Below are positions 1 to 50,065 of a stretch of DNA of 64,000 nt, piece after piece (positions within the stretch are counted from its first letter, which is position 1; each line of letters starts with the position of its first letter). Position numbers and translations under genes: made by a program. The stretch is from Ruditapes philippinarum (lineage: Eukaryota). Location: contig NW_026859993.1 in NCBI RefSeq assembly GCF_026571515.1, forward strand, positions 124,001 through 188,000, read 5' to 3'. The notes under the pieces were generated by a model. It searched no databases. It saw nothing but the letters and a program-made list of their open reading frames with translations, and was not told the DNA's origin.

Positions 1-412
1 GTCTGAAGATTTACCTATTGTTGTTCCTTTTGAAGAAGGACTTGACAAAGTCAGTTCTGGTACCCATACGTCATCGTAAGATACTGTTATTTGCTCGATT
101 CCACCATTTAGCTTTTTGTCCCAACGTAACTTTTCATCCATCCAGTGAAGTTGCAAGGCTGCAACAAAAGCAAATTTTTCATCCACTTCGTCGAATTCTT
201 TTATTGACTTTATAAACATAAATACTTTTACGTCAATGGTCAAGCTTTGATCCGTTATTGGACGCACATTTTTGTTATAGCCAGTGAATAACGACATATG
301 AAGATTCTCCATTTCCGTGATATTAGCTGCGTTTATAAGCGATAATAACAAAATATAATACTTTCAAGTATCTGAAGGCTTGGAAAACACCAGTATATCC
401 TTCAAAAGCCAT
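1..412 (-). CDS. Cys-loop ligand-gated ion channel (nAChR-like) subunit, copy A1; 5' part only, continues beyond the window start
   Basis: Near-identical and co-linear with the 5' part of ORF 40684..41985 (MAFEGYTGVFQAFRYL...WVPELTLSS). ATG at 412-410, no indel seen by eye. Confidence 0.88.
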
Positions 413-2013
413 TCTGGTAATATTTGTAAATAATGTATCTAAACAAAATAAGTTCGTGTTTAAAATCTCTTTTTTCTCACAATAGCGCTACTGTAAGTTG
501 CTGAAGATGGATCTCTATTTAAACGTAAAGGAATTTCATTGTATTTTTATTGATATCTTCAAGTGAGGCTTAATGTATTTATCTATTTAATGATTTATTT
601 TCCCGATGGTGTCGAATGATGAATTGTTTTTAAAAATCTAACTTAACAAATGTCATTCATCCGTATTAATACGTCAATAGCATAAAAAAGTCATTATTGA
701 TTTTAGCTGTTAGAGTAAATGATGAGGTCAAACCCCTTTGTATAGAAACCAACATTTTTATCTTTGAATTGATTTCTCTTTTTGATCTGTATTATGTTTA
801 CTAATTATACCGTTCATAATATATTAATGGCAAATCTATTTTTTTGGTCACGTTTTGGCTTTCATTATGCTCAAAACAAAGCCTTTCATAGCGACTTTAA
901 ACATTAAACAACTAAACATTTGCTTATTCCCCCTTTAAAACCATTAAATTTAAACAAAAATTTTTTATCTTAGAATTTTAACAGCAACAGTAAAACATGT
1001 TAATAGGACTAATTTTAGTTTGGTAAAAAAGGTGTTATAGACTTTTTTGGGGAAAATTTAGAAAGGCTTGTATGCATGGAACCGTCATCGATTTAACATG
1101 AAGGAATATATTCAATACTATACATTAGCCACATCTTCCATGAATCATAGTCTTGTTAATAACATTTAAATTATGTTGTAATTAAATAAACGATTTTGTA
1201 ACTCATTCTGTTGCAACATTTTCAAAGAAAGGTAAATATAGTCATGCTGTTCATAACATTATTCTGTCTTGTCAATTAGTTATGAAAATAATAAAGACTT
1301 CATTAATTAACTCTGTATTTCATGTTTATATAAATAGAGTGTTTTATAAACATAGTTCTCAATTATCCATTGCTGATCGGAAAATATAGCTTAAATGGAT
1401 TTTGGGTATTCTTTAGAAATTCTGTTTTTTCCTCTATCTCTATGTTAAAATAATAATGACAAAAGTGTGATTTGTTTTGTAGTTTAATATTTATCTCTTA
1501 TAAATATTACATTCACATAAAAAAATGATTTTAAAAAAGTTAAACGACATAGGTTTTACTTTATAGCTTATATGTATCATAAACGTCCCATACAAAATGA
1601 GATTATTGATTATAATACAAGATCCAAACAGTGTTCAATGAGTGCATGAAACCCGACTCAAAATGCATTTTTTTTTAATTTCCATCATTTTTTATTTAGT
1701 AGTGAGCCATTGGTTATGATGTGATATTCACCGGAAGAATTGTCAACTGACTGAGGCGATAGCTACCCGCAGTGATTATGCTGAGCAAGCGTTCGCTTAA
1801 CAACCGTTTGGACCATTTACATCATATAATAATGGTCAATTTGTATCAACACTTGACTATAAATGAAACCATATTCTGTTAAATACATGTTTAAAATTGA
1901 TAGTTTTACGAGATAGATGGAATCAAAAACCTTATTATGAGAAAATCAAAATTAGCCAGTTGAACATCTTTGAAAATATGCTAGAATATGCATTCATTGA
2001 CCGTGCTGTTGCT

Positions 2014-3113
2014 TTACGACGCTGCCATTCCTAAAAATAAGATCATATTCATCACTGTCAAAAATATACATGTAAACAGGGCGATCCAGTCAACCATATA
2101 ACTTATTTGTTTCCATGTTATGGGATCGTCTTTTCTCTCTTGTTTATTTTTCAGCTCGCCAGAACAGTCCTTTGTTTTACTATTAGATGCGTTTTCTTGC
2201 ATTACAGTACTATCGGTACCCTTAAATTTGATTTCACGTCTTTGTTTCATTTCTTCTGTGTCGTCTGGATGAGTCTTTCTGCCAGTACAGGTTAAAAACC
2301 TATATATAGACTTCAGCCAATTTGGTACACTATTGTTATCGTCTTTACAATATAGTCGCATGTCTATGATGGTGACAAAAACTATTAGGGCGCTGATAAG
2401 CAAATCAATCATCAACTTGTAGGAAATAAGCGGTACCGGCTGTGAAGTTTGGGGCAGTAAATCATTGACAATGGTCATGTAGACAGCAATAACGAGAAGT
2501 GTCGTAATGCAGTATCCTATACGTTCTCCCGATTCTGGCACAAGAAGAAACACAAGAACATTTAATAAGCTTAGTATTAATATGGGCATTATTATGTTAA
2601 TCACAGCAAATGTTGCATTCCTTTCTAAGTGTATAGTGAACGTTATTTCAGCCTCATTTCCAGATCCTAATATCACCGTTTTAACTTCTGATGCAGTAAT
2701 ATCCCATAAGGCATGAGGAGAGTAAACATTTAACATGACGTTCGGAAATCCGGCTTGAAGATTCACTTCATTACTCTTGTAACCGAGAGAAGTAAAGCTA
2801 GTGTCACAGCTCTGAGAATCAAAGGGACATTTCTTAGCGTTTACGCTGCACGTGCTTTCAATGAGACCCGCTGGCATCCACTCCATTTCACCCCATTCAT
2901 TAACACGGAATCTGTCAGAAGATTTGTCTATGGTTGTCCCTTTTAGGAAGGGCTCGACAAAGTCATTTCTGGTACCCATAAGTCATCGTGGGACACAGTT
3001 ATCTGCTCGATACCTCCATTGACATGTGTTGCGGCGTTTATAACCCCTATTATAAAATATCTATGACACCAAACATAGTAATCTCCTCTAAATTCCATTT
3101 TGGTAGAAGTCAT
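2014..3113 (-). pseudogene. nAChR-like receptor pseudogene, copy B1
   Basis: Paralog of 43616..44941. Relative to it there is a deletion of about 210 bp of extracellular domain near 3025, a smaller deletion near 3058 and a 1-bp loss near 2945. The Cys-loop FPFD reads CPFD. M1-M4 remain open (ORF 2014..2979). Confidence 0.88.
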
Positions 3114-3779
3114 CTGGAGGAAAAAATCGTAAACAAAATTTATAAACTGAAAATATCAGATAAGGTGGTTTGGTTTTTTTTCCAATATATTTCAGGGTCA
3201 CTTATTCATAATAAGACATTACATAGATTTCGATGAATGGTTTAACGCTGCGATACAATGATGCGTATCAGTTTACAAATATAGAGTCTAAAATGCGCTC
3301 AAATATATAATTGATTTAGATCGAAAATATACAAAATGTATATGAAAAGCGAGAAGATTGAAAAGCTACAATAGATAACAAATGATGTAAATTTCTTCCA
3401 ATTTTTTTTATGATACTTTATAGATTATTTTCTATTTTCGTGTTCTTCGTTCGACAAAGTAGTCGAGCTGATACAAAATTATCGGAGAGGGAACCGTGAA
3501 GGTGAAGGCATCAATGCAAACAAGTTACATATTCTTATCTTTTTCGACACGTGATAGTACATTGGGGTTTTAAAATACAGAAATAATAAGCTTCATTCGT
3601 AAGCAATTTCGATGTTTCTACGTTTGATGCAACACTATCGCATTAACTAATTAATGATATCAAACTAATTTCCCTGGTTTGGAAAACTTTTACTCAGGAG
3701 TTGAGTTATAACATAAGGGTAAAGTTGTCTTTCTGGCGTGTAATGCTCAAAAGGTATTCTTTATAAACTGTATTATAAA

Positions 3780-5210
3780 CCATTTTTTCGTTGGCGATAT
3801 GTGATGAAGTTCAATGAGCACTCACATTTCTTTTGTCAGGTCTGGTAATACCTTTTTCAAATAGACAATATGAATTTCTTAAATTATTGTACTAATTGTA
3901 TACCCATTACCGCATAAAAGTTTTTATATTGCTACGAAAGAGATTTCTTGTTGAGCCTCTTTCCAGATACACAATAAGATGTAATAGTAGCATTAAAAAT
4001 CACTTCCAGATACTTTGATGATATTTTTACTTAGATGAAACTTCTCAAATATCTAAAATATTCCCAATTCACTTAACTGAATAAAATTTATTTTACTACA
4101 TCATTTTTTAATCTTCATATTAAAATCGGTAACGATACTATTCACACAAAATCTGTGCTAAGAGAATTGTCTTTGATTTTGGTAAATTGAATTAACCGCA
4201 TTTACATATAGATGTACCGCATGCATCATCTAAGCATGGGCTATATATGTAAATTTATTTTTTTCTACAGGACTTGTAAGCCATTGTAAACTTTTTAAAT
4301 TTGAAATATTTTTACTTAATTTTAAAATGGTAACTTCTAAAAATTCATAGCGATTTGTAAAACTTTTGCGGCAAGGAGTAAAGGACGTCTGATTTTATAG
4401 AGATGTTACCTAGAAACGATGTTCTTGGGTAATGGTAATTTGTCTTCTATCTTTTCTAAAACTTTTATTTAAAAAGGATGTTAAGTTGCGGCATGGCCGA
4501 GTGCTATTAGCGGCATGGTCAAGTGGTTAATGCGTCGGACTAGTAATCCAATGATTGCTAGACACATAGGTTCAAACCCGTCAGGTGCAAGTCGTTGTTT
4601 CCTAAAGCAAGAAACTTTACAACTTTCGAAAACAAATTCTGTATAAAAAGGTTACTACACTACTCTTTAATTTACAGCATATTTTAATGTTCAACCCCTT
4701 TACAGCTGCACACAACGCTTTCTCCTTTTGATTCCATCTGCCAGACTAAGTTAGACAGTTCTTGAAACTTATTGATGTTAAATTTGTCGTAATTTCACTC
4801 TTCCTCCTCCCTTCGTCGGGCCCTTATGTGTGATTTTCTAGCTGCTCTGTCGTTCTTTAAACATTAAATACTTTGGTTATTTCTGTGTTTTGCTTATTTC
4901 ACCTCATAACCATAACATATGCCAAATTTCGCTTGTTGGGGATCCATCTTATTTACACTGTCGCGTTAACCAGGAACATGTTGTGGCTAAGAGGGGCCAA
5001 GAATGGGGTTTGGTGCATCATTACCCTGTTTAAACTCAAAATAATTGCCAGCCTATGTTCCTGAAATGTATTTCTTGTTTATTTCTACACCATTTTTTGA
5101 TAACACTGTTGTGTCCTTTGTGTCATTTCCTATCACCAACGGTTAATATCCCTTTCCTCTAGTTATTTTTTCAAATGTGACTCCTCTCCCCAGTCCTGGT
5201 CCTTGTTCCC
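3780..5210 (+). mobile_element. Old, degenerate Penelope-like (Naiad-like) retroelement remnant
   Basis: TSRYFDDIF RT motif near 4003-4030. 4170-5040 is co-linear with the better-preserved copy at 26163-26985 (ttttggtaaa...gtaccgcatgca...tatttacactgtc). Confidence 0.65.
4488..4625 (+). mobile_element. tRNA-derived SINE with a CORE-like segment
   Basis: A-box-like tggtcaagtgg, B-box ggttcaaaccc, then gttgtttcctaaagcaagaaactttac. The 5' end is partly duplicated. Absent from the paralogous site near 46150. Confidence 0.65.
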
Positions 5211-9665: not shown

Positions 9666-9769
9666 TATTACAATATTTATGTATGCAAACATCAGACTTT
9701 CACTAAAAGTTTTAAAAAATTAAGACTTAATTAAAATATTATTTGAAATTTTACTGAAGACATAACAAT

Positions 9770-11390
9770 AATTTTAAGTCTATATTGGGTTTACATTGCT
9801 ATTATATAGACTGTTATTTCGAAGTTTCAATATATTATAGCAGGTTTTTGCTATTGTACGTATCATTTCTGGGCGGGAAAACAAAAATTGAAACTTATCA
9901 ATATCATTAAGTAATTTGAAATTTGTATTTAATATAACTGCCTTTTCTAAAAGTAAATTCCTATCAACAGAGTAAGTTGGACATTTCAATGACACATGGA
10001 TTTCGTTTTCCACCGAGTCTTTGCAAAATGGGCACACTCTTCCAGATTCAGGTACTCTTTTATAACGCCAAGTTTCTAGTCGAAGTTGCGCTACGCACAT
10101 CTAAACTTTGCTAACGCAGATCTATGTGCATATGGTAATTGTAATTTAGAATACGTTGCAACTTCATAATAAGTTTTTTAAAAGTTTGTGTGTCCTTAAT
10201 TTATTACGACCTGTGCCACTATCACTTGACACTCGATCAATATCGGTTCTCCATTGCAGAATATGAGCATCAATAAGAGCATTTGTCATATTAGACACTA
10301 GATTTTTACGATGAAAAGGTAATTGAATAAATGATGCTATATTATAAGAAACTTATCCTTTACCAAAAATGGCAAAATCTTCACACCAGTACTACTTTTA
10401 GATAAAGCCCAATCAAATATTCTCTTTTTGATTCTACAAGTGTCATAATTATGACAGCGGTACCAGTGATTACAAGTTGCTTTCCACTGGTCAACAATAA
10501 TTGGATTCCAACCCATATCTCCTTGTACAGCTGCATTTGGTGTATTTTTACCAGTGCTAAGGTAGAATCTCTTTGCTCTATGCTGCAATACAAGAGAAAT
10601 ACTTGATCCCCCATATAGCTGCCCCATAAGAAATAACAGGAACAACACATGAATAATAAAATTTGGTATAAATTTCGTAATAGGGTAGACCACCTTGACT
10701 TTTGTATTTAGCAATGAGAAGCCCCAAGGCACGACCAGCACTTTGTGTTACTGTTTTTGCAGTGATATTATAAACAAGATGTTCTGTAAATAAAATACCA
10801 AGATACATATACTTATTAAAATACTATATATAACAGAAGTACCACACTTAAAAACACTTTTGACATCAAATCAGTCTGTAAAATATCCATTTATACGTAC
10901 ACATGATGATATATTTTGATACAAGGATTTTACAGCAGTTAATATTTTTGTAGACAATCGAATATCAATGAGCTTCTGCCAAAGAAAATTTCTGTTAATG
11001 GAATCAAAAGCTTTTCTGAAGTCGATGAAAGCACAAAATGTAGATTGTTTGTTTTTCTTACGAGTATCGATAATATTTGTAAGGCTGGACAAATGGTCTA
11101 TTGTGCTACGTTTTTTTTTCGAAAACCGTTCTGTTCATCAACAATTATTTTTTTTGCATCTGTCCATTTTACAATACGTTCATTCAGAATACTTGTATAC
11201 ATATTATACATTGTTGAAGCTAATGAAATACCTCTATATGACATAGGATCTCTAAGATCATTTGAACTAGATTTTGGTATTGGGTTAATAATACTCTTTG
11301 ACCACAATGACGGAATTCTTCCGGTTTGGAAACAGACATTAAACAAGTTGTGAAAAACAAACAATGAAACTTCATTTTTTAACAAATCTT
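9770..11390 (-). mobile_element. Degenerate, 5'-truncated, internally deleted non-LTR retrotransposon (RTE-X-like)
   Basis: Frameshifted ORF pieces with YRGISL, EQNGFRK, AFIDFRKAFDSINR, YLGI and a C-terminal LETWRY...CPFC...ENEIH...C zinc motif. The YADD region is missing near 10870. Confidence 0.85.
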
Positions 11391-13250: not shown

Positions 13251-14537
13251 CTAGGATTTTGCAATGCCGATAAATATGATCATATTCATTACTGACATAA
13301 ACAAGAAGGCAAAAAAGGCAATCCAGTCAATCATGTAACTTATCTTCTTCCACGTTATTGGGTTGTTCTCTTCATCTATTTTTCTCAGCTCATCAACACT
13401 TCCCTTTCTCTTATATTTAGCTGCGTTTTCCTCAATTTTCTTACTTTTAGTCGAGCCAATCGCGCCTTTTGGTTTTTCCTCAGCGGTTTTGTCTGGGTGA
13501 ATTCTGCTGCGGGTACATATCAAAAACCGGTAAACTGACTTGAGCCATCCCGGGACGATAACCTTGTCGTCTCTTCTGTATAGACGCATGTTTACGATGG
13601 TGACACACACTATCAATGCACTCATAATCAAGTCAATCATTAACTTGTAGGAAATAAGAGGTACCGGTCGTGAAGTTTTAGGCAACAAATCATTGACAAT
13701 TGTCATGTACACGGCAATAGCAAGAAGTGTCGTAATACAGTATCCAATACGTTCTCCCGATTCTGGCACAAGAAGAAACACAAGAACATTTAATAAGCTT
13801 AGAATGAATATGGGCACCATGATATTTATCACAGCAAACGTTGCGTCCCTTTTCAAATGCATTGTGAACTTTATTTCAGACACACTACCAGTTAATATTA
13901 CCGGTTCAACTTCTGATCCCGTAACATCCCATAAAGAGTCACCAATATATTCAGTTAAATTGATTTTTTGAAATCCAGCATGAAAGGTCACCTCATAGCT
14001 TCTGTAACCTATGGACGTAAAATTTGTGTCGCAACTTTGAGTGTCAAATGGAAATTTCTTAGCGTTAACATTACACGTGCTTTCTATGAGACCCCCTGGT
14101 ATCCATTCCATTGTACCATTTTGGTCAACACGAACTCTGTCAGATGATTTCCTAAATATTGACCCTGTTGAAGAGGGACTTGATAATTCAATTTCCGGTA
14201 CCCATACATCATCGTGGGACACTGTAATCTCTTCGATGCCGCCATTGGTAGTTTTGTCCCAAAGTAACTTTTCATCTGTCCATCGAAGTGTCAACGCTGC
14301 AACAAAAGAAAACTTTCCAGCCGCTTCGTCGAACTCTCGGATTGACTTTACATACATATACACGTATACGTCTATAGTCGAGCTTTGATCAGTTACTGGT
14401 CGAACAGTTTTGTTATAGCCACCGAACAATGACTTATGTAGTTCCTTCATCTGAGCGATTGTTGCAGCGTCTATAAGCTGTATTATTATGAAGAACCTTA
14501 AGGCTCGGAAAACAGAAATATATCTTTTAAACACCAT
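13251..14537 (-). CDS. Cys-loop ligand-gated ion channel (nAChR-like) subunit, copy C1; intact, single coding exon
   Basis: 428-aa ORF with signal peptide, WVPE loop A, Cys-loop CNVNAKKFPFDTQSC, M1-M3 (ESGERIGYCITTLLAIAVY), short intracellular loop and M4. Confidence 0.95.
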   Translation of the reverse strand: MVFKRYISVFRALRFFIIIQLIDAATIAQMKELHKSLFGGYNKTVRPVTDQSSTIDVYVYMYVKSIREFDEAAGKFSFVAALTLRWTDEKLLWDKTTNGGIEEITVSHDDVWVPEIELSSPSSTGSIFRKSSDRVRVDQNGTMEWIPGGLIESTCNVNAKKFPFDTQSCDTNFTSIGYRSYEVTFHAGFQKINLTEYIGDSLWDVTGSEVEPVILTGSVSEIKFTMHLKRDATFAVINIMVPIFILSLLNVLVFLLVPESGERIGYCITTLLAIAVYMTIVNDLLPKTSRPVPLISYKLMIDLIMSALIVCVTIVNMRLYRRDDKVIVPGWLKSVYRFLICTRSRIHPDKTAEEKPKGAIGSTKSKKIEENAAKYKRKGSVDELRKIDEENNPITWKKISYMIDWIAFFAFLFMSVMNMIIFIGIAKS

Positions 14538-20957: not shown

Positions 20958-22510
20958 ACAAGTCTTGTAAGTCTTGCTTGTATTGGAATTACTTTCCTTA
21001 CCAGGTAGGCATCAGTGAAAGCATTATTTTTAATTAATATCTGACCCCTCTCTCATAGATAGTGCATATAATAAGTATAATTATGCGAATTTAAACGATC
21101 TACAAAACATCCGGAATGATTTACAATAGTACTTGACCTAAATAGAAAATGACCTGTGCGCAGTCCTGAATATTAGGTAAGGTGTCTGTAAACGAGTTTT
21201 TTTATTGCGCGGAGCTTCTCATTTGATGCATTGCAGCAACATTTATACTTGTAGACAAAAAGTCTTTATTTAGAATAGTTCTGTTCTATTTAATCGATAA
21301 TGTTTGTCAATGTGTGCTTTTTTTAATTACAGTCTAATCTTTGTCCAGAATTGGTCTTTAAAAGAAGTGTATCTGTATTTGAGTTATTCGTTTCATAAAA
21401 TATCTGGCCAGATTCTCTGCATTATCACAGAAAACATGAATCATATAAATAAATGAATTCAGGTACCCCCACTTGATGATATTCAATAAGTGTCTAATAG
21501 ATTATATAATAATCGATGTGATTTCAATTGGTATAATTTTTATATTTTGCATATTTTGCATATTAATCAAGTATTTATAAATATAACAGTCTACCAACTG
21601 CGTAGATGTTCGTGTTAGAATATTGAGTTCACTTACCGAAACGACAGATTCATGTAGGAACACATATATTTCACAATGTTCCATTTTTTTTTGAATTACT
21701 AACCCCATTGTTTACTGTCAAATAAATAAAAAGGTTTCAAAAACTTAGAAATAACATAAATTAGTTAACGAGGTTTATTTCGGCCGAGTATCTTGTTTAA
21801 AAAAAAATTCTGGCAGTCATATGAGATATTTATGGCATCTATGATAAAATGCATTGCTGTCAAGGGTCTGTCGCGGCGTATTGGAACTGTCAGACAGTAT
21901 TCTGATATATTCAGATTTTCATTTTTTTTTTGCGAAATCTGGTAGTTTATTATACTAATGTAGACTAATGATTGTGATTACAAAAGGTTTTGTCGACACT
22001 TGTCCGAAGGAAGAGATTAAGAAAATCCCCTTTTCATCTTGATATTTATAACGTGATTGTAAGTTCTTTGTGAAATTCTCATAAATTTTATTTTACCACA
22101 ATACCTGCTATATAACAACAATATATAATCAATAAGTCTTGTATAAGAATGCCACCTTATCTCATGAATGTTTTGAGAGACATCGGTGTATATATAACCT
22201 TTCTTCCTTATAAGTCCTTAATTTTTGTATTTTAACATATGATCATATTGATTACTGACACAACAGTACAAATACAAAAAGCAATAAAGTCGATCAAATA
22301 ACTTATTTTTTTCCATTTAATAAGACCATCGTCTCTATCTGCTTTTACCAGTTCGTAAGAACTTTTCTTTGCTTATCATTTAGATGAATTTTCTTGATTA
22401 ACATTTCTTTCCTTTATATTGTTTACACGTTCTTGTTTGCTTTCCCCGGTGTCACCTGGTCAGTACAGATTAAAACTCTAAATACAGACTTCAGACAAGT
22501 TGGTACACTA

Positions 22511-22879
22511 TGTGCGTGTGTTTAGATTTGTTTATACTGGGTGCCGGTTCCGATATGTCCCATACTATTACGTCGCTGGTCGTAGAGCCTGCAACGGAAG
22601 ACTTAGTTCGTCTGCAACGTCGCCGATCGTAAGGCCGCAACGGAGGTCTTCTCATGCCGTCTTTCGTCATAGATATTCTCTAGGACCCAGTTCCTCGCTT
22701 CCTAAACGCAGTAGACAATATAGAGGAAAGGCACCTCTTGCGGGAGCAGCAGCTCTCTTTAGGGCCAAACCCTTCGCCGTTGGTTAGGTCACACCAGCTA
22801 AGTGACCTAACTAAGTCACCCATCTGGTGTGACCTATGCCTTGCGAGCGACGTGCACGCCGCGAAGGGAAATCGGAAGA
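22511..22879 (-). mobile_element. 369-bp GC-rich non-coding retroelement with an 11-bp TSD and a 5' HDV-like ribozyme fold
   Basis: Flanked by ttggtacacta (22500-22510) and ttggtacccta (22880-22890), a motif present once in intact paralogs. AC-rich 3' tail on the minus strand. Confidence 0.85.
22770..22878 (-). ncRNA. Candidate HDV-like (CPEB3-type) self-cleaving ribozyme
   Basis: P1 CUUCCGA/UCGCAAG (1 mismatch), P2 CCCUUCGC/GCGAAGGG, P3 GCG/CGC, L3 UGCACGU, P1.1 GC/GC, 13-bp P4 UAGGUCACACCAG/CUGGUGUGACCUA, J4/2 ACCAA. Confidence 0.75.
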
Positions 22880-23717
22880 TTGGTACCCTATTGTTATCGT
22901 CTTTACTATATAGTCGCTTGTTTATGATGGTGACAAAAACTATTAGGGCGCAAATGAGCAAATCTTTAAAAATTTTATAAAAAATAGTCCGTAGCCAATC
23001 AATACAAGACGTTCACAGATTTGTTGACTTTAACGCCCGTGCCGTCTATGATCTTTACAGTTTTCTATTCAGTTAGTAGTTATTTTGAATTCAGTTTTAA
23101 AAATCCCACGGTATTGTCCAGATTGAAAGATATCGTTGACTAGGTTAACATTATGTCTTAACAATGCTGATGTGAAGTCTTAAAGTTGAGTTCTTAAATG
23201 AGAACTAACAATTAAAAAGGCAGTAAACAATAACAATAAGGCTGAAATCTGTTTAGTTATCTAAAGTGTCATATAATTGTAATTATCATTAAACGTTTTG
23301 AATATCTTATTACACAGGATCTCTTTCATAATGCAGTAATATTTCAGAACTTATATTTGTCAATTAATATTACCTTAATATTACTGAAATGCATATTTTA
23401 GTTCTTATTCAAAAGTTTTTTTTTACCAGCTATATACGGAAGTCAATTAAATTATACATAGATATTTTAATCTTTCAAAGAGTTTATTATCAAATTTCCT
23501 ATTTATCGAAAATTCGACTCTCTTTGTAAAGGAATATAAGTATTTAAATAGCAATTAATTTTAATGAAATAAACTCCAAATTCAATCAACGACAATCCCT
23601 AGTAGATATGATTGTTAAATTTTATCCTGTAAAATTGGAAATGACAACCTTTAATTTAGCCACTATTACTCTTCTTAATTTATTGCCTTAAAAGACTGAA
23701 TTGGTTTAATTTTACAC

Positions 23718-26720: not shown

Positions 26721-26940
26721 TACTGTCTTGCTTCGTCGGGCGCTTGTATGTGATTTTCTTGTTGCTTTTCCTTTAGGACATTGAGTACTTTTGCTATGGT
26801 CATTGGGTTTACTTTTATTTGTTTCTACATAATCATTTTTGTAATATGCTTGTTTAACCTTTTGTAACCATAAAAACTTTAAGAATTTGACTTGGCAGGG
26901 ATTCATTTTATTTACACTGTCCCGTTGATAGGAACATTGT

Positions 26941-35000: not shown

Positions 35001-35090
35001 TTTATGTCTCATTTTATCTAAAATGCTTAAGACATTAGTTTACAGTTAACAGTGGATATGATCATGCATTGTCCGTTTTCTTTGCTTTAA

Positions 35091-36361
35091 TTACGACGTT
35101 GCCATTCCCAAAAAAATAATCACATTCAGAAGTGACAAATTATACTTGTGCAAAGGGCAGTCAAGTCAACCATATAGCTTATTTTCGTCCAAGTAATAAG
35201 ATCGCCTTCGTCCATTTTAAGCTCGTGAATAGTTTCCTTTTCAGTGTATCCAGATTTATTTTCCAGTATTTCCTTACTTTTGTTTGAATTGGTCTCAATT
35301 ACTGGCTCAATTTCACCGTTTTCGACTCGTTGATTTTTGCGGCAGGTACAGGTTAAAACTCGATACACAACCTTGAGCCACGCAGGGACAAGATAACTGT
35401 TGTCCCTGCTATACAAACGCATGTTAAGGATGGTGACAAATACTATCATTGCGCTTATAAAAAAGTCTATCATTAACTTGTAAGAAATAAGCGGTACTGA
35501 CTGGGAAGTTTGGGGCAATAATTTATTGACAATGGTCATGTACACAGCAATAGCGAGAAGTGTTGTGATACAGTATCCAATACGTTCTCCCGATTCTGGC
35601 ACGAGAAGAAACACGAGAACATTTAACATGCTCAGAATTAATATTGGCATTATAATGTTTATCACAGCAAACGTTGCATCTCTTTTCAAATTTATAGTGA
35701 ACGTTATTTCAGACTCATTTCCAGATGATGTTAGCTTCGCGTTAACTTTTGATCCGGTGACAGCCCATAAGGTGTGAGGAGTATAAACATTAAAATAGAC
35801 GTACGGCGATTCAGCTTGAAGATTCACTTCATGGCTCTTGTAACCTAAGGAAGTAAAACTGGTGTCGCAACTCTGAGTGTCGAACGGAAAGTTTTTAGCG
35901 TTAACACTACACGTGCTTTCAATGAGACCCCCAGGCATCCATTCCATTTGACCAAATTGGTCACCACGAATTATGTCAGATGATTTTCCTAATGTTGACC
36001 CTTTTGAAGAAGGACTCGACAATGTCAGTTCAGGTACCCATACATCATTGAACGACACTGTAATCTGTTCGATGCCACCATTGACACTTGGGTCCCATTG
36101 TAACTTTTCATCTGTCCATGAAAGTACCAACGCTGCGACAAAGGAAAACTTTTCATTCACTTCATCAAAATCCCTAATTGACTTAACTGACATATCTATT
36201 TTAACTTCAATTGCCGTGTTTTGGTTCGTTATTGGTCGCACATTTTTGTTATAACCAGTGAATAATGACGTATGTAGAGTTTCCATTTCCGTTATTGTAG
36301 CAGCGTTGATTAGTACTATTACAAAATGTAATATTATCAAGAAACTTAGTGTCCCCAACAT
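35091..36361 (-). CDS. nAChR-like subunit E; 1-bp frameshift inside M4 (real lesion or assembly error)
   Basis: 411-aa ORF 35126..36361 with full extracellular domain, Cys-loop and M1-M3. The paralog-like end SLLNVIIFFGMATS* lies in another frame, stopping at 35091. Confidence 0.85.
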
Positions 36362-37502: not shown

Positions 37503-37735
37503 CAATGAATAAGTGAATAAGTTTATCATTAACTTGTAAGACATAAGCGGTACTGGGCAACAATTCGTTGACAATAGTTATGTACAAGGCGATGGCAAAG
37601 AGCGTTATGACCCAAAACCCAATATGTTCTCCCAATTCTAGTACCAGAAGGGACACATGAACATTTCACATAATGACATTACAATATCACATCACAAATT
37701 GCACCCCTTTTCAACTTTATTGTGAACGTTATGTT
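37503..37735 (-). pseudogene. Highly degenerate nAChR-like fragment F (pre-M1 to M3)
   Basis: ITFTIKLKR, LLVLELGEHIGFWVITLFAIALYITIVNELLP and a PLMSYKLMI remnant, with deletions. Confidence 0.8.
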
Positions 37736-37829
37736 ACAGGAACTTAAATCGCTATAGATCAGATAAATAAAATCCTGAAACAGTATGTTGACTTGTATTT
37801 AATTATTTTTCCCTTAAATATTCTACCAC

Positions 37830-40683: not shown

Positions 40684-41985
40684 CTACGAGGTTGTCATTC
40701 CAATAAATATGATCATATTGATCACTGAGAAAAGCAAACAAGTAAAAAGAGCAATCCAGTCGATCATGTAACTTATTCTTTTCCATGTTATAAGACCATC
40801 GTCCTTCTCTGAATGTTCAAGGTCGTTGGAGATTTTATTTTCTTTATGTTTAGATGGATTTTCCTGCATTGCACTTCTTTCATTTAAATTGTTTTCACTT
40901 TCTGCTTTGATTCCCGCGGTGTCGTCTGGATAAATTTTTCTGCCGGTACAAAATAAAAATCTGTATACGAATTTTAGCAGCTTTGGTACACTATTATTAT
41001 CGTCTTTACTATATAGTCGCATGTTTACGATGGTAACAAAAACTATCATCGCGCTTGTGAGCAAATCAATCATCAACTTGTAGGAAATAAGCGGTACTGG
41101 CTGTGAAGTCTGGGGCAGAAAGTCATTGACAATGGTCATGTAAACAGCAATTGCGAGAAGTGTCGTAATGCAGTACCCTATACGTTCTCCCGCTTCTGGC
41201 ACCAAAATAAATACAAGAACATTTAATAAGCTTAGTACAGATATGGGCATTATTATGTTAATCACCGCGAAAGTTGCATCCCTTTTCAAGTGTAAAGTGA
41301 ATGTTATTTCAACCTCATGATCAGATCCTAAAAGCGTCGTTTTTACTTCTGATCCAGTGACATCCCATAATGCATGAGGAGAATATACATTAAACATAAC
41401 GTATGGAACTCCAGCTACAAGATTTACTTCATTGCTCTTGTACCCAAGGGACACAAATTTAGTATCGCAACTCTGAGTATCAAAGGGAAATTTCTTAGCG
41501 TTAACGTTGCACGTGCTTTCAATGAGACCCGCTGGCATCCACTCAATTTCACCCCAATCATTAACACGGATTCTGTCTGATGGTTTCCCTATTGTTGTTC
41601 CTGTTGAAGAAAGACTAGACAAAGTCAGTTCTGGTACCCATACGTCATCGTAAGATACTGTTATTTGCTCGATTCCACCATTTAGCTTTTTGTCCCAACG
41701 TAACTTTTCATCCATCCAGTGAAGTTGCAAGGCTGCAACAAAAGAAAACTTTTCATGCACTTCGTCGAATTCTTTTATAGACTTTATATACATAAATACT
41801 TTTACGTCTATGGTCAAGCTTTGATCCGTTATTGGACGCACATTTTTGTTATAGCCAGTGAATAACGACATATGAAGATTCTCCATTTCTGTGATATTAG
41901 CTGCGTTTATAAGCGATATAACTAAATATAATACTATCAAGTATCTGAAGGCTTGGAAAACACCAGTATATCCTTCAAAAGCCAT
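40684..41985 (-). CDS. Cys-loop ligand-gated ion channel (nAChR-like) subunit, copy A2; intact, single coding exon
   Basis: 433-aa ORF with signal peptide, Cys-loop CNVNAKKFPFDTQSC, EAGERIGYCITTLL M2 and four TM helices. Confidence 0.95.
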   Translation of the reverse strand: MAFEGYTGVFQAFRYLIVLYLVISLINAANITEMENLHMSLFTGYNKNVRPITDQSLTIDVKVFMYIKSIKEFDEVHEKFSFVAALQLHWMDEKLRWDKKLNGGIEQITVSYDDVWVPELTLSSLSSTGTTIGKPSDRIRVNDWGEIEWMPAGLIESTCNVNAKKFPFDTQSCDTKFVSLGYKSNEVNLVAGVPYVMFNVYSPHALWDVTGSEVKTTLLGSDHEVEITFTLHLKRDATFAVINIIMPISVLSLLNVLVFILVPEAGERIGYCITTLLAIAVYMTIVNDFLPQTSQPVPLISYKLMIDLLTSAMIVFVTIVNMRLYSKDDNNSVPKLLKFVYRFLFCTGRKIYPDDTAGIKAESENNLNERSAMQENPSKHKENKISNDLEHSEKDDGLITWKRISYMIDWIALFTCLLFSVINMIIFIGMTTS

Positions 41986-43615
41986 TCTGGTAATATTTGT
42001 AAATAATGTATCTAAACCAAAATAAGTTCGTGTTTAAAATCTCTTTTTTCTCACAATAGCGCTATAGTTGCTGAAGATGGATCTCTATTTAAACGTAAAG
42101 TAATTTCATTGTATTTTATTGATATCTTCAAGTGAGGCTTAATGATTTATTTCCCGATGGTGTCGAATGATGAATTGTTTTTAAAAATCTAACTTAACAA
42201 ATGTCATTCATCCGTATTAATACGTCAATGGCATAAAAAAGTCGTTATTGATTTTAGCTGTAAGAGTAAACGATGAGGTTAAACCCCATTGTATAGAAAC
42301 CAACATTTTTATCTTTGATTTTTTTTTCTCTTTTTCATCTGTATTATGTTTACTAATTATACCGTTCATAATATATTAATGGCAAATCTATTATTTTTGG
42401 TCATGTTTTGGTTTTCATTATGCTCAATAGACGTAACAGCCTTTCATGTTGGACTTAAACATTAATCAGACTAATCGCACTAATTTAAAACAAAATTTAT
42501 GATCTATAGAATGTCAAATCCGCATACACTGGAGATTGCAATATGTCAATTTGTAGCACAATGTAAACATAGAGTAAAAATACATTAATAGAAAGATGAC
42601 GAATGAAATTTACATACTTTGTCGGAAATATTTTTGACAGGCTTCAAGCATGGAACCGTCAACGATTTAACATAAAGGAATGTAAACAATGCTATACATT
42701 AACCACATCTTCCATGAATCACAGTCTTGTTAATAACATTTAAAATTAGGTTATAATTAAATCAAGAATTTTATAACTCAATCTGTGATTTGCAACATTT
42801 TCAAAGACAGGTACATATAGCCATGCTGTTCATACTATGATTCTGTCTTTTGTCTGTTAGTAATCAGAATAATAAAGACTTCATTAATTTACTCTGTACT
42901 TCATGTTTATATTAAAAAAATACGAATACACGTGTTTTATAAACATGATTCTAAATTACCCAGTGCTAATCAAGAAAAGTAGAGGAAAATAGAATTTAAA
43001 TGGACTTTTAGGTATTCTTTAGGAATTCTTTTGTTCTCTATCACTATGTTAAAATAATAATGACAAAAGTGTGATTTGTTTTGAAGTTTATTATTTATCT
43101 CTTATGAATATTACATTCACACAAAAAAAAAATGATTTGAAAAATGTTAAACGACATAGGTTTAACTTTATAGGTTATATGTATCATAAACGTCCCATAC
43201 AAAATGCGATTATTGATTATAATACAAGATCCAGGCAGTGTTCAATGACTGCATGAAACCCGACTCAAAATGCATTTTTTAAAATTTCCACCATTGTTTA
43301 TTTAGTAGTGAGCCATTGGTTATGATATGATATTCACCGGAAGAATTGTCAACTGACTGAGGCGATAGCTACCCGCAGTGATTATGTTTAACCATGCGTT
43401 CGCTCAACTACAGTTTAGACCAATGAGATTTCAGATATATTTAGATCATATGATAATGGTCAATATTTGTTACAACACTTGACTATAAATAAAACCATAT
43501 TCGGTTAAAGACATATTTGAAATGAATAGTTTTTACGAGATAGATGGCATTAAAAAGCTTATTGAACACATTCGAAAAGATGCTAAAATATTCATTCATT
43601 GACCGTTCTGTTGTT

Positions 43616-44941
43616 TTACGACGTTGCCATTCCCAGAAAAATGATCATATTCATCACTGTCAAAAATATACATGTAAACAGGGCGATCCAGTCAACCATA
43701 TAACTTATTTGTTTCCATGTTATGGGATCGTCTTTTCTCTCTTGTTTATTTTTCAGCTCGCCAGAACAGTCCTTTGTTTTACATTTAGATGCGTTTTCTT
43801 GCATTACAGTAGTACCGGTACCTTTAAATTTGATTTCACTTCTTTGTTTGACTTCTTCGGTTTCGTCTGGATGAGTCTTTCTGCCAGTACAGGTTAAAAA
43901 CCGATATATAGACTTCAGCCAATTTGGTACACTATTGTTATCGTCTTTATTATATAGTCGCATGTTTATGATGGTGACAAAAACTATCAGGGCGCTGATA
44001 AGCAAATCAATCATCAACTTGTAGGAAATGAGCGGTACCGGCTGTGAAGTTTGGGGCAGTAAATCATTGACAATGGTCATGTAAACAGCAATTGCGAGAA
44101 GTGTCGTAATGCAGTACCCTATACGTTCGCCCGATTCTGGAACAAGAAGAAACACGAGAACATTTAATAAGCTTAGTATTAATATAGGCATTATTATGTT
44201 AACCACTGCAAAAACTGCATCCCTTTTCAACTGTATAGTGAATGTTATTTCAGACTCATTTCCAGATCCTAATATCACCGTTTTAACTTCTGATGCAGTT
44301 ATATCCCATAAGGCATGAGGAGAGTATACATTTAACATAACGTTCGGAAATCCAGCTTGAAGATTCACTTCATTACTCTTGTAACCGAGAGAAGTAAAGC
44401 TAGTGTCACAACTCTGAATATCAAATGGAAATTTCTGAGCGTTAACGCTACATGTGCTTTCAATGAGACCCGCTGGCATCCACTCCATTTCACCCTCTTC
44501 ATTAACACGGATTCTGTCAGAAGATTTGCCTATTGTTGATCCTTTTGAGGAAGGACTTGACAAAGTCAGTTCTGGTACCCATACGTCATCGTAGGACACA
44601 GTTATTTGCTCGATACCGCCATTAATACTTTTGTCCCAAAGTAACTTTTCGTCCATCCATATAAACTGCAATGCAGCTACAAAGGAAAACTTTTCATCGA
44701 CTTCGTCGAATTCCCTAATTGACTTTATATACATAAAAATTGTAACATCTATAGCCGAGTTTTGGTCCGTTATTGGTCGGACATTTTTGTTATAACCAGT
44801 GAATAATGACGTATGAAGATTCTCCATTTCCGTGATTGTTGCTGCATTCATAACTCCTATTATAAAATACAAAGTTATCAAATATCTATGTACACCAAAC
44901 ACTGTTATCTCTCCTCTAAATTCCATTTTTGTAAAATTCAT
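43616..44941 (-). CDS. Cys-loop ligand-gated ion channel (nAChR-like) subunit, copy B2; intact, single coding exon
   Basis: 441-aa ORF with Cys-loop CSVNAQKFPFDIQSC and M1-M4. Confidence 0.95.
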   Translation of the reverse strand: MNFTKMEFRGEITVFGVHRYLITLYFIIGVMNAATITEMENLHTSLFTGYNKNVRPITDQNSAIDVTIFMYIKSIREFDEVDEKFSFVAALQFIWMDEKLLWDKSINGGIEQITVSYDDVWVPELTLSSPSSKGSTIGKSSDRIRVNEEGEMEWMPAGLIESTCSVNAQKFPFDIQSCDTSFTSLGYKSNEVNLQAGFPNVMLNVYSPHALWDITASEVKTVILGSGNESEITFTIQLKRDAVFAVVNIIMPILILSLLNVLVFLLVPESGERIGYCITTLLAIAVYMTIVNDLLPQTSQPVPLISYKLMIDLLISALIVFVTIINMRLYNKDDNNSVPNWLKSIYRFLTCTGRKTHPDETEEVKQRSEIKFKGTGTTVMQENASKCKTKDCSGELKNKQERKDDPITWKQISYMVDWIALFTCIFLTVMNMIIFLGMATS

Positions 44942-45734
44942 CTGAAAAAAGTCGTAAACAAAATTTACAATTTAAATATCCCTTTGTTATTTTTACAAAG
45001 ACCCATATAAACTGAAAAGATCAGATAAGGTGTTTTTTACAATATATGTCAGGGTCACTTATTCATAATAAGACATTACACAGATTTCGATGAATGGTTT
45101 AACGCTCCGATACAATGATGCGTATCAGTTTACAAATATAGAGTCAAAAATGAGCTCAAACTTATAATTGATTTAGATCGAAAGTATCAAAATGTATATG
45201 AAAAGCGAGAATCTTTAAAGTCTACCATAGAATAGGTATTTATAGAAGTTTATAAACATGTGTATTGCATTTTTCTGTTTATGTACACGTACTACTGTAA
45301 ATATCATTCTCTTAAAAAGAATTATATAAATTTCTTCCATTCACGGGAATTTTCGATTTTATATGATACTATAAATCATTTTCGGTTCTTCTTTCGAAAA
45401 GGTATTATATCTGATACATAATCTTTGGAAAATGAACCGTGAATAAAACAAGTTAAATATTCTTGTCTTTCCCGACACAGGATAGTAAATTGAGGTTTTA
45501 AATTAGAGAAATATTAAGTTTCAACCGTCAGTAATGAAGATGTTTAACTTTGATACATCACTACCGCATCAGCTTATTAATGATAAACATATTTCCCTTG
45601 TTGATAAACTTTTACACAGGGGTAAAGTTATCTCGAAAAAAAGTTTTACACAACGGTTGTCTTTCTTGCATGTATTGCTCAAAAGGTTTTCTTTACAAAC
45701 TTTATTGTAAAACATAATTCCGTGGGGACCTGCG

Positions 45735-46255
45735 ATGAAGTTTAAAGGGCACTCATGTTCCTTTCGAATAACATTTATGTCAGGTTTGGCAATACCCTTA
45801 TTGTGTACTCATGACAGCCTAAATGATTTTATATTGCTACGAAAAATATTTTTGTTAAGCCTCTCTCCAGATAAACAGCAAGATGTTATAGTAGCATTAA
45901 AAACACTTCCCGATATAATGATGATAGTTTTACTTAATAGATAAAACTGACTTTGATTACAAATATTTTCCCAATGAACCCAACTGAATAAAACTATTTT
46001 TTACTAAATTTTGGATTGAATTTCAAAATTCAATAGCGATTTGAAACCACTTCTGCGACAAGAGGTAAGCAAGATTTTAAAGAAATGTTATGTAAACACT
46101 TTGTAAGATCTTAAGTCATGGTAATTTGTCTGCTGTATTTTATTTAATAATATCATTACCCTACTCTTTAAGGCATACTGCATGCTTAAATGTTTAACCC
46201 CTTTACAGTTCGACGCAACGCTTTCTTCTTTGGTTACATCTGATGGACTAACTGT
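45735..46255 (+). mobile_element. Paralogous remnant of the old Naiad-like element
   Basis: Co-linear with parts of 3800-4750, so it inserted before the duplication. Confidence 0.55.
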
Positions 46256-46259
46256 TATT

Positions 46260-48420: not shown

Positions 48421-48774
48421 TTGTCGTTTTAAATCACCAAAATAGAAATTAGAAATGACTTATATACTGATTGCAGATCATATCACTATTTAAGTTTTTG
48501 TATTTTAGCGGCAGTAAATATGGCATGAACAAAGTAAATAAATGCTTCGTTCAATGCATTACCTTTGTAATAATTCCAGTTAAATACAATGTTAAAAATC
48601 ATACCGATCCTTACTTAATCCATTTATAAAAAATTTGCGAATAATACTAATTTAATGTATTAATTTCTAAGCAATCGCCCCGTATATGCTTGCAACTACC
48701 TTGTATAAACAAATGGTATATACATCTGCGCAAAGACCATTGAGAAGACAAACATGTCCTTCTAGTTCTTTAAT

Positions 48775-50065
48775 CTAAGACATTGCAATGCCGACAAATA
48801 TGACCATGTTCATTACTGACAAAAACAAGAATGTAAACAAAGCAATCCAGTCAACCATGTAACTTATCTTCTTCCACGTTATGGGGTCGTTTTCTTCATC
48901 TATTTTTCTCAGCTCATCAACACTTCCCTTTCTCTTATATTTAGCTGTGTTGTCCTCATTTGTCTTACTTTTAGTCGAGCCAATCGCGCTTTTTGGTTTT
49001 TCCTCAGTGGTTTTGTCTGGGTGAATTCTGCTTCGGGTGCATGCCATAAACCGGTAAACTGACTTGAGCCACCCAGGAACTATAACGTTGTCGTCTCTAC
49101 TGTACAGACGCATGTTCACGATGGTGACAAAAACTATCAATGCGCTTACAATCAAGTCTATCATTAACTTGTAGGAAATAAGTGGTACCGGTCGTGAAGT
49201 TTGGGGCAGTAAATCATTGACAATTGTCATGTACACGGCAATAGCAAGAAGTGTCGTAATACAGTATCCAATACGTTCTCCAGATTCTGGCACGAGAAGA
49301 AATACAAGAACATTTAATAAGCTTAGAATCAATATTGGGCATCATGATGTTTATCACAGCAAAAGTTGCGTCCCTTTTCAAATTCATTGTGAACGTTATT
49401 TCAGATTCATTACCGGATCCTAATATAACCGTTTTAGCTTCTGATCCAGTAACATCCCATAACGAGTTAGGAATATATACCTCAAAACTGATGTTTGGAA
49501 ATCCGGCTTGAAGATTCACCTCATGGCTTTTGTAACCTAGGGACGTAAAACTTGTGTCGCAACTTTGAGTGTCGAACGGAAATTTTTTAGCGTTTACACT
49601 ACATGTGCTTTCTATGAGACCCCCTGGTATCCAGTTCATTTCTCCACCATCAGTAATACGGATTCTATCAGATGATTTCCCAATTACTGACCCTTTTGAA
49701 GAGGGACTTGATAATGTCATTTCCGGTACCCATACATCATCGTAGGACACTGAAATCTCTTCGATACCGCCATTGGAATTTTTGTCCCAACGTAACTTTT
49801 CATCTGTCCATATAAGTGTCAACGCTGCAACAAAAGAAAACTTTTCATCCACTTCGTCGAATTCTCGGATTGACTTTATATACATATACACTTTTACGTC
49901 TATAGTCAAGCTTTGATCAGTTATTGGTCGAACATTTTTGTTATAGCCAGTGAATAATGACGTATGTAGATTTTCCATCTCTGTGATTGTTGCGGCGTCT
50001 ATAAGCTGTATTATTATCAAGAACCTTAAGGCTCGGAAAACAGAAATATATCCTTTAAACACCAT
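48775..50065 (-). pseudogene. nAChR-like subunit C2 with a +1 frameshift at the start of M1 (pseudogene, ectodomain-only variant or assembly error)
   Basis: ORFs 49214..50065 and 48775..49332 join into a full receptor if one A is removed from atgcccaatattg (about 49336). Confidence 0.8.

What the first reader, a model, noticed from the sequence alone, without database searches (positions are those of the whole stretch)
1..50065. Tandem array of intronless nAChR-like cation channels lacking the whole acetylcholine-binding cage: candidate chemosensory receptor family
Seen: nine co-oriented loci. Every readable ectodomain has loop A WVPE(L/I/M)xLSS (no Tyr of WxPDIxLYN), loop B S(L/I)GY (no Trp of SWTY), loop D FVAALxxxW (Ala at the complementary Trp) and loop C such as VILGSGNESEITF (no YxCC...Y). 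The Cys-loop, -1' Glu (GER), 9' Leu and 13' Val are kept. Established: those aromatics and vicinal cysteines form the ACh site, and -1' Glu marks cation selectivity. Cephalopod chemotactile receptors are intronless, clustered nAChR derivatives lacking these residues, and bivalves have large nAChR expansions. Inference: these channels are gated by something other than ACh and may be an independently evolved chemosensory array.
Basis: partly seen in the sequence, partly recalled or inferred. Interest (0 to 1): 0.85.

Follow-up and report, generated by a model that had tools for sequence, protein, structure and literature searches.

The report
Clam nicotinic-like channel genes without acetylcholine site
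A clam (very likely Manila clam) carries a tandem cluster of single-exon nicotinic-receptor-like cation channel genes that cannot bind acetylcholine in the usual way, but this is typical of the published bivalve expansion of the family, and a sensory role is untested.

Summary
Nine co-oriented (minus strand) nAChR-family loci lie at 1-50065. Every readable ectodomain lacks the loop A Tyr, loop B Trp, loop C YxCC..Y and loop D Trp. The Cys-loop, -1' Glu, 9' Leu and 13' Val are kept.

Only three copies are fully intact (13251-14537, 40684-41985, 43616-44941). Two carry one frameshift each, and four are truncated or relics. The array continues left of the window, giving 13 loci on the contig.

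Intact copies are under purifying selection (omega 0.19-0.37; TM1-3 0.09). One looks transcribed. The array is monophyletic and arose after the Ruditapes/Mercenaria split.

The missing ACh cage is not special to this array. None of 45 distinct single-exon paralogues sampled genome-wide, and none of about 100 bivalve homologues, has the loop C Cys pair, loop A Tyr or loop D Trp. Canonical intron-containing alpha-type genes with SWTY and YxCC exist elsewhere in the genome.

Intronless tandem bivalve nAChR expansions with degenerate binding sites are published (PMC6896357, PMC11592408, PMC13174522). This scan reached the same verdict on another array of this genome (s1-811303).

The chemosensory idea is neither supported nor refuted. 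Verdict: new member of a known kind, modest interest.

The parts
1..351 (-). N-terminal part of a broken copy that runs off the left edge of the window (contig C8480:123121-124351). It is the decayed duplicate of the 40684 gene.
   Evidence: stop and frameshift in the signal peptide; 1 TAG and 1 TAA in the match. Its ectodomain still reads FVAALQLHW and WVPELTLSS.
2014..3113 (-). Broken copy, the recent duplicate of the 43616 gene. A 321-aa ORF covers residues 130-441 (91% identical). Residues 36-105 are deleted and there is a frameshift near residue 130.
   Evidence: One search shows block 417-4749 is 85% identical to 41990-46251. dS to 43616 is 0.195.
13251..14537 (-). Intact single-exon gene of 428 aa: signal peptide, LBD, four TM helices.
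   Evidence: Omega 0.19-0.35 against the other copies.
22238..22985 (-). Relic of the C-terminal part (about residues 305-434) in three frames, 41-52% identical.
35062..36361 (-). Nearly intact copy. The 411-aa ORF (35126-36361) ends early because of a frameshift inside TM4. The rest of TM4 reads on in another frame.
   Evidence: The nucleotide match reaches 35062.
37546..37744 (-). Short relic of the TM1-TM2 region (about residues 228-299).
40684..41985 (-). Intact single-exon gene of 433 aa.
   Evidence: Omega 0.23-0.27. No contig cover in the two transcriptome-like runs.
43616..44941 (-). Intact single-exon gene of 441 aa, used as the reference copy. The apparent transcript spans about 43127-45017.
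   Evidence: AF2 model pLDDT 87.9. Contigs of runs X1 and X2 cover 43127-45017 only.
48775..50065 (-). Copy with a single frameshift in TM1. Two overlapping ORFs of 283 and 185 aa together cover the whole protein.

Best explanation
This is a birth-and-death tandem array of nicotinic-receptor-family (Cys-loop) cation-channel subunit genes. Each gene has a single coding exon. The genome is a venerid clam, very likely Ruditapes philippinarum. The array grew by local segmental duplication after the split from Mercenaria. It belongs to the published, genome-wide bivalve expansion of such genes.

Shown: the intact members keep the whole channel and gating apparatus. That includes the Cys-loop with FPFD, pre-M1 Arg, M1 Pro, -1' Glu, 9' Leu, 13' Val, 20' Asp and four TM helices. 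The five aromatic-box residues are replaced by small or aliphatic ones (Ser, Leu/Ile, Ala). Loop C is a little shorter than in alpha6, has no cysteines and has a Gly/Ser-rich tip.

Inferred: they assemble into cation-selective pentamers. These cannot bind acetylcholine in the canonical way on either face. They are most likely opened by some other, still unknown agonist in a remodelled, roomier inter-subunit pocket. Where they act (sensory epithelium, gill, neurons, embryos) is unknown.
For: Identity:
- Pfam LBD plus TM domains.
- Best solved relatives are nAChR beta1, alpha6 and alpha7, E 1e-47 to 1e-41.
- AF2 model pLDDT 87.9, with Z 28-33 to nAChR chains.

Loss of the ACh site:
- The alpha6 alignment and the motif table.
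- The substituted residues are themselves conserved across the wider heterodont clade: Ser at loop A, Leu/Met/Ile at loop B, Ala at loop D.

Functional constraint:
- NG86 omega is 0.19-0.37 for all intact pairs, 0.09 in TM1-3 and 0.25 in the ectodomain, with dS 0.1-1.0.

Transcription:
- Contigs of two transcriptome-sized runs cover only 43127-45017, that is the gene plus UTR-like flanks and not the intergenic DNA.
- 14 such runs from 9 studies hold 20-25% of the words of the stretch.

Origin:
- The array is monophyletic (SH-aLRT 100) and sister to two Mercenaria proteins (99).
- A two-gene block was duplicated at 85% identity.

Context:
- The genome gives 727 first-look LBD candidates. 150 were scored, and most hold a full LBD in one ORF, in many arrays.
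- 0 of 45 distinct paralogues have the loop C Cys pair, loop A Tyr or loop D Trp.
- Canonical intron-containing alpha-type exons with SWTY and YxCC exist elsewhere in the genome.
- Literature: PMC6896357, PMC11592408, PMC13174522.
Against: - No functional data exist.
- The runs that show the transcript are only guessed to be RNA, and their tissues are coded.
- The one informative-looking raw RNA run (X21) gave flat two-strand cover with GATC junctions, so it looks like DNA or proximity ligation. X23 gave no reads.
- Vertebrate beta1, the best sequence match, is a subunit that binds no agonist at all. Loss of both faces is therefore equally what a structural subunit looks like.
- Six of the nine loci in the window are damaged, so the array is partly decaying.
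- The pocket was not modelled as a pentamer.
Confidence: 0.6

Rival explanations
1. These are accessory or structural subunits. They contribute no agonist site and co-assemble with canonical ACh-binding alpha-type subunits encoded elsewhere in the genome. They would tune conductance, trafficking or desensitisation, as vertebrate beta1, beta3 and alpha5 do.
For: - The best PDB sequence match is muscle beta1, which takes part in no binding site.
- Both faces have lost their ACh contacts.
- Canonical alpha-type genes with SWTY and YxCC exist in the same genome.
- Loops C and F are the least constrained parts of the ectodomain, omega 0.7-0.9, as expected if they no longer contact a ligand.
Against: - Structural subunits are normally few and conserved. 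Here there are hundreds of paralogues evolving by birth and death.
- The replaced pocket residues are conserved rather than drifting.
- Octopus CRs with the same losses form ligand-gated homo- and heteropentamers (PMC11526382).
Confidence: 0.25
2. The array is a chemosensory receptor family that detects external chemicals (food, biofilm, predator or settlement cues). It would have evolved independently of, but in parallel with, cephalopod chemotactile receptors.
For: - It shares the gross features of CRs: nAChR-derived, single coding exon, clustered, ACh contacts lost, cation pore kept (PMC11526382).
- It shows lineage-specific birth-and-death turnover typical of chemoreceptor families.
- Variation is concentrated in pocket-wall loops C, F and E.
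- All 120 best homologues that carry a name are bivalve, so any such role arose within bivalves.
Against: - There is no expression evidence for sensory tissue.
- Omega in the loops does not exceed 1.
- The loop C tip is Gly/Ser/Asn/Glu-rich, not obviously hydrophobic like the described CR pocket.
- No CR appears among the 50 closest solved structures.
- In oysters and pearl oysters the expanded genes are expressed mainly in gill, in embryos before a nervous system exists, in gonad, and in stress or immune responses (PMC6896357). That does not single out chemosensation.
- The features cited apply to hundreds of paralogues, so they do not mark this array.
Confidence: 0.15
3. This is a functionless, decaying array of duplicated retrogene descendants.
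For: - Six of nine loci in the window carry frameshifts, deletions or are relics.
- Intron-poor bivalve nAChR genes are more often silent than intron-rich ones (PMC6896357).
Against: - Intact copies have omega 0.19-0.37, and 0.09 in TM1-3, over dS up to 1.0. ORFs of 428-441 codons have stayed open.
- The subfamily has conserved orthologues in Mercenaria and Mactra.
- There are transcript-like contigs for 43616-44941.
Confidence: 0.05

Closest known systems
Bivalve intronless, tandemly arrayed nAChR expansion (Jiao et al. 2019, PMC6896357; noted for R. philippinarum and M. mercenaria by Sun et al. 2024, PMC11592408)
   Same: - Single coding exon, tandem arrays and lineage-specific clustering of paralogues.
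- LBD-NTM architecture and pseudogenised members.
- Most members lack the principal ACh-binding residues. In the oyster only 33 of 132 are alpha-type, and 13 of those keep the full site.
   Different: Nothing in kind. This is a specific 13-locus array of one venerid subfamily that has also lost the loop B Trp. About half of the other sampled clam paralogues retain that Trp.
Cephalopod chemotactile receptors (CRT1, CRB1; van Giesen 2020, Allard 2023, Kang 2023, as summarised in PMC11526382 and PMC13174522)
   Same: nAChR-derived pentameric cation channels. They are intronless and clustered, and they are not expected to bind ACh.
   Different: - CRs are a predominantly cephalopod clade. The nearest relatives here are all bivalve.
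- CR pocket sites are reported to be under strong diversifying selection and hydrophobic. Here omega stays at or below 0.9, and the loop C tip is small and polar.
- Sucker expression and terpenoid or bitter gating have no counterpart tested here.
'CR-like' and divergent molluscan nAChR clades with binding-residue substitutions (MolluscaGenes preprint, PMC13174522)
   Same: Molluscan nAChR clades, including bivalve members, with substitutions at the ACh-coordinating positions. That preprint raises the idea that they add an ionotropic chemosensory component.
Alpo4, the orphan nAChR-like receptor of the annelid Alvinella pompejana (PMC10338036)
   Same: A lophotrochozoan nAChR-like orphan without the loop C Cys pair. 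It is unresponsive to ACh and 5-HT, and its ligand is unknown.
   Different: Alpo4 keeps the aromatic cage (F103, W159, Y199, Y205, W65). The clam proteins have lost all of it.
Vertebrate non-binding nAChR subunits (muscle beta1; beta3, alpha5)
   Same: The best sequence match is beta1, E 6e-47. No functional agonist face.
   Different: Those are single conserved intron-rich genes that work only in heteromers. These are members of a fast-turnover single-exon array.

Membership tests
Cys-loop pentameric ligand-gated ion channel, nAChR branch | Neur_chan_LBD plus Neur_chan_memb domains | tested here: met
   PF02931 E 5e-43 to 5e-42 and PF02932 E 8e-16 to 2e-19 in all four long ORFs.
Cys-loop pentameric ligand-gated ion channel, nAChR branch | C-x13-C Cys-loop with FPFD, pre-M1 Arg, M1 Pro and four TM helices | tested here: met
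   (invariant C178, P172, D174, R240, P252). AF2 helices at 242-265, 272-294, 304-330 and 409-440.
Cys-loop pentameric ligand-gated ion channel, nAChR branch | Cation-selective pore signature: -1' Glu, no PAR motif, 9' Leu | tested here: met
   SGER..., 9' Leu, 13' Val and 20' Asp. Anion-type PAK motifs occur only in other, intron-containing genes of the genome. Selectivity itself was not measured.
Acetylcholine-gated nAChR subunit (alpha-type principal face) | Loop C vicinal Cys pair with flanking Tyr, loop A Tyr and loop B Trp | tested here: not met
   (alignment to alpha6): Ser, Leu/Ile, and no Cys or Tyr in loop C in every copy.
Acetylcholine-gated nAChR subunit (complementary face) | Loop D Trp | tested here: not met
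   Ala at this position in every copy.
Bivalve intronless tandem nAChR expansion (PMC6896357) | Coding sequence in one exon | tested here: met
   complete ORFs from signal peptide to the end of TM4. A 5'UTR intron is not excluded.
Bivalve intronless tandem nAChR expansion (PMC6896357) | Tandem array with lineage-specific clustering of paralogues | tested here: met
   (13 co-oriented loci in about 68 kb). (monophyletic, support 100). (block duplication).
Cephalopod chemotactile receptors | Membership of the CR clade | tested here: inconclusive
   No CR sequence could be obtained for a joint tree. All named hits among the 120 best homologues are bivalve. No CR is among the 50 nearest solved structures.
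Cephalopod chemotactile receptors | Diversifying selection on pocket residues | tested here: inconclusive
   omega is 0.7-0.9 in loops C+F and 0.56-0.73 in loop E, against 0.13-0.25 in the rest of the ectodomain. It is elevated but not above 1. There were few sequences and no site model.
Cephalopod chemotactile receptors | Expression in contact-chemosensory epithelium and gating by poorly soluble environmental molecules | not testable with these tools
   Run and sample names are coded. There is no physiology.

The most novel reading that the evidence does not exclude
This array, and by extension much of the clam's repertoire of hundreds of single-exon nAChR-like channels without an ACh site, is an ionotropic chemoreceptor family for external cues. 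It would have arisen in bivalves independently of cephalopod chemotactile receptors. That would be a second conversion of nicotinic receptors into environmental sensors within molluscs.
Probability: 0.15. Interest if true: 0.7.

Novelty: new member of a known kind. Interest (0 to 1): 0.3.

Why it matters
Bivalves carry one to several hundred nicotinic-like channel genes, and their ligands and roles are essentially unknown. This array is a clean, compact example. It holds five intact paralogues counting the two just left of the window, of graded ages, with every ACh contact replaced and the pore kept. One looks transcribed. That makes it a convenient set for de-orphanisation experiments.

If such channels proved to be environmental sensors, it would extend the octopus finding (neurotransmitter receptor turned chemoreceptor) to sessile filter feeders. 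As a genomic finding, however, it repeats what is published and what this scan already reported for another array of the same genome.

Tried and rejected
1. Joint phylogeny with cephalopod CRs was not possible.
- No CR sequence was reachable by reference.
- The PDB sequence search lists only the best 60 hits.
- Foldseek and VIA-align top-50 lists held only vertebrate and Torpedo nAChRs.
- The van Giesen 2020 paper is not held.

2. Tissue of expression could not be determined.
- The look-up of sequencing runs returned coded names and no run on record as RNA holding the stretch.
- Read laying (single call allowed) showed gene-bounded contigs in X1 and X2.
- Raw 'RNA' run X21 gave flat two-strand cover with GATC-flanked loose ends, which looks like proximity-ligation or DNA. 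X23 gave nothing.

Synteny in Mercenaria and the source of the short contigs P0001, P0002 and P0007 could not be examined. The listing of cluster members added no names.

4. The protein-atlas search only confirmed the family.

5. Considered and rejected:
- Haplotig artefact. The copies differ by dS of at least 0.1.
- Anion selectivity. All copies have GER, not PAR.
- Whole-array pseudogenisation. Omega is well below 1 in the intact copies.

6. A pentamer model and pocket hydrophobicity could not be computed. Only monomer prediction is offered and no coordinates are returned.
Full report
**What is in the window**

The window is G000:C8480:124001-188000 of a 1.41-Gb assembly in 15,874 contigs. 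The window's proteins sit on the same 314,427-bp contig as an NCBI protein named for Ruditapes philippinarum. The closest named homologues are from Mercenaria, Mactra, Dreissena and Mya. The organism is therefore a venerid clam, very likely the Manila clam.

ORF listing and tblastn of the 441-aa ORF against the window find nine loci, all on the minus strand, between 1 and 50074.

- Three are complete ORFs: 13251-14537 (428 aa), 40684-41985 (433 aa) and 43616-44941 (441 aa).
- 35126-36361 (411 aa) stops early because of a frameshift inside TM4. The rest of TM4 reads on in another frame.
- 48775-50065 has one frameshift in TM1.
- 2014-3113 lacks residues 36-105 and has a frameshift.
- 1-351 is the N-terminal part of a copy with a stop and a frameshift in the signal peptide and more stops left of the window.
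- 22238-22985 and 37546-37744 are relics.

On the contig the array continues to the left. There are two more intact genes (C8480:106511-107827 and 112783-114087) and one more broken one (118951-119905). That gives 13 co-oriented loci in about 68 kb.

**What the proteins are**

All four long ORFs carry Neur_chan_LBD and Neur_chan_memb. The best solved relatives by sequence are muscle nAChR beta1 (E 6e-47), alpha6, alpha7 and 5-HT3A. An AlphaFold2 model built on an 89-sequence family alignment has mean pLDDT 87.9. It shows the expected beta-sandwich plus four helices and a disordered M3-M4 loop. It superposes on nAChR chains with Z 28-33.

**The binding site**

The HMMER alignment to human alpha6 (8zrn_A) gives the following substitutions.

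| Site | alpha6 | These proteins |
|---|---|---|
| Loop A | Tyr in WKPDIVLYN | Ser in WVPELTLSS |
| Loop B | Trp in GSWTY | Leu in TSLGY |
| Loop D | Trp in NLWLRHIW | second Ala of FVAALQFIW |
| Loop C | KYNCCEEIY | Gly/Ser/Asn/Glu tip, three residues shorter |

The M1-M2 and M2 segment reads PESGER-IGYCITTLLAIAVYMTIVND. That gives -1' Glu, 9' Leu, 13' Val and 20' Asp, which is the cationic signature and not the PAR or PAK motif of anionic molluscan receptors.

Columns invariant in the 89-sequence family alignment include the second Cys-loop Cys, the Cys-loop Pro and Asp, the pre-M1 Arg, the M1 Pro and the -1' Gly-Glu. The first Cys-loop Cys is nearly invariant. The inference that these proteins cannot bind ACh canonically, on either face, follows from established nAChR structure-function knowledge.

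**Are they working genes?**

Pairwise Nei-Gojobori estimates for the six intact or near-intact array members give omega 0.19-0.37, with dS from 0.10 to 1.04.

| Region | Median omega |
|---|---|
| TM1-3 | 0.09 |
| TM4 | 0.16 |
| Ectodomain | 0.25 |
| Intracellular loop | 0.49 |

Within the ectodomain, variation is concentrated in loops C and F (omega 0.7-0.9) and loop E (0.56-0.73). Loops A, B and D give 0.16-0.40, and the rest gives 0.13-0.25. This pattern fits diversification of ligand specificity. It equally fits relaxed constraint on loops that no longer hold a ligand. Omega does not exceed 1, and no site model could be run.

Contigs of two transcriptome-sized runs (X1, X2) cover 43127-45017 only. 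That is the 43616 gene with about 490 nt downstream and 76 nt upstream, and neither the neighbouring gene nor the intergenic DNA. Fourteen such runs from nine studies hold 20-25% of the words of the 4.6-kb stretch. I read this as transcription of 43616-44941. The caveats are that these runs are only guessed to be RNA and that their tissues are coded. Raw run X21 gave flat cover on both strands with GATC-flanked loose ends and is uninformative. X23 gave no reads.

**Origin**

In a maximum-likelihood tree of 75 family members, the window and upstream copies form one clade (SH-aLRT 100). That clade also holds two short unnamed database contigs. It is sister to two Mercenaria proteins (99), then to Mactra and other heterodont sequences.

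The block 41990-46251 (the 43616 gene plus flanks) matches 417-4749 at 85%. The copy at 1-351 is the counterpart of the 40684 gene. So a two-gene block was duplicated and both new copies have since decayed. Older paralogues align only across the coding sequence. This is tandem segmental duplication with birth-and-death turnover. Transposon debris lies between the genes, for example an integrase zinc-binding domain at 31014-31682.

**Is the array special?**

No. A Pfam LBD search of the whole genome gives 727 first-look candidates. All 150 that were scored pass the curated cut-off. Most hold the complete LBD in one open frame, in many arrays (C4135, C11557, C10856, C11676, C8871 and others).

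Among 45 distinct single-exon ORFs sampled from 60 loci, none has the loop C Cys pair, the loop A Tyr or the loop D Trp. About half keep the loop B Trp, and all keep -1' Glu. The same holds for about 100 homologues from other bivalves.

Canonical receptors exist elsewhere in the genome as intron-containing genes. Five of six exons fetched from partial LBD matches read GSWTY/GSWTH with YxCC in loop C. Some have cationic and some anionic M1-M2 motifs.

**Literature**

- Jiao et al. 2019 (PMC6896357) described 99-217 nAChR genes in bivalves, mostly intronless or intron-poor and in tandem arrays of up to 12. In the oyster only 33 of 132 are alpha-type and 13 of those keep the principal site. They suggested diverse ligands. 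Expression was mainly in gill, early embryos and gonad, and under stress or infection.
- Sun et al. 2024 (PMC11592408) list Neur_chan_LBD and neuronal acetylcholine receptor families among expansions shared by R. philippinarum and M. mercenaria.
- The MolluscaGenes preprint (PMC13174522) reports molluscan clades with binding-residue substitutions and a 'CR-like' clade that includes bivalves. It raises the ionotropic-chemosensor idea.
- Alpo4 (PMC10338036) is a lophotrochozoan orphan that stayed silent to more than 30 ligands.
- This scan had already noted the left continuation of this array (s1-803801). For another array of the same genome, a follow-up verdict was identical to mine (s1-811303).

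**Mechanism and verdict**

- Shown: these are constrained nAChR-family subunit genes with a single coding exon, a cationic pore signature and no canonical ACh site. They were produced by recent local duplication.
- Inferred: they form cation-selective pentamers gated by something other than ACh in a pocket lined by small residues. The conservation of Ser, Leu and Ala at the replaced positions across Veneridae and Mactridae argues for a remodelled site rather than a decayed one.
- The accessory-subunit alternative stays serious. The best match is beta1, and canonical alpha subunits are available.
- The chemosensory reading is possible but has no specific support here, and its supporting features apply to hundreds of paralogues.
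- I file the finding as a new member of a known kind, of modest interest.

**Limits**

- No pentamer model could be made.

Noticed in passing
window 44942-44960, 14538-14550, 41986-41995 (minus strand, just upstream of the ATGs): A polypyrimidine tract followed by CAG or TAG sits directly, or within 1-3 nt, before the start codons of three intact genes. A spliced non-coding 5' exon is therefore possible. One X2 contig nevertheless runs unspliced 76 nt upstream of the 43616 gene's ATG.
   Followed up: partly
window 28227-31682 (+): Remains of an LTR-retrotransposon-like element. The ORF at 31014-31682 has an integrase zinc-binding domain (PF17921, E 7e-15). The region has a strong positive GC skew (0.18-0.21).
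   Followed up: partly
window 61354-62487 (-): A 377-aa ORF without any Pfam hit, next to the assembly gap at 60557-61083. By eye it has a YRDD-like motif and a C-terminal stretch that recalls GIY-YIG nucleases, so it may be part of a Penelope-like retroelement. This was not tested.
   Followed up: no
window 9780-11385 (-): Short ORFs that look like debris of a non-LTR retrotransposon. There is only a weak RVT_1 hit, E 0.038, at 11098-11385.
   Followed up: partly
L009 (C13857:12965-14233) versus L010 (C8392:292259-293527): Two contigs carry nearly identical copies of the same paralogue with the same flank offsets. They are probably haplotigs, so family counts from this assembly are inflated.
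   Followed up: no
L061, L065, L066 (C5389, C12391, C7674): Intron-containing alpha-type nAChR exons with YxCC in loop C and a PPESPAK/PTK M1-M2 motif. These are candidate anion-selective ACh receptors like those described in Lymnaea.
   Followed up: no
run X21 laid on window 40500-45100: This run is labelled RNA-Seq cDNA. It gives even, two-strand cover of genes and intergenic DNA. 104 of 149 reads fit only partly, and loose ends begin or end in GATC, which looks like a proximity-ligation (DpnII/MboI) or DNA library.
   Followed up: no
P0016 (Mactra antiquata homologue): A source names this 52%-identical homologue 'serotonin-gated cation-selective channel'. It has the same Ser, Leu and Ala substitutions and no aromatic cage, so the name is probably an automatic transfer.
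   Followed up: no
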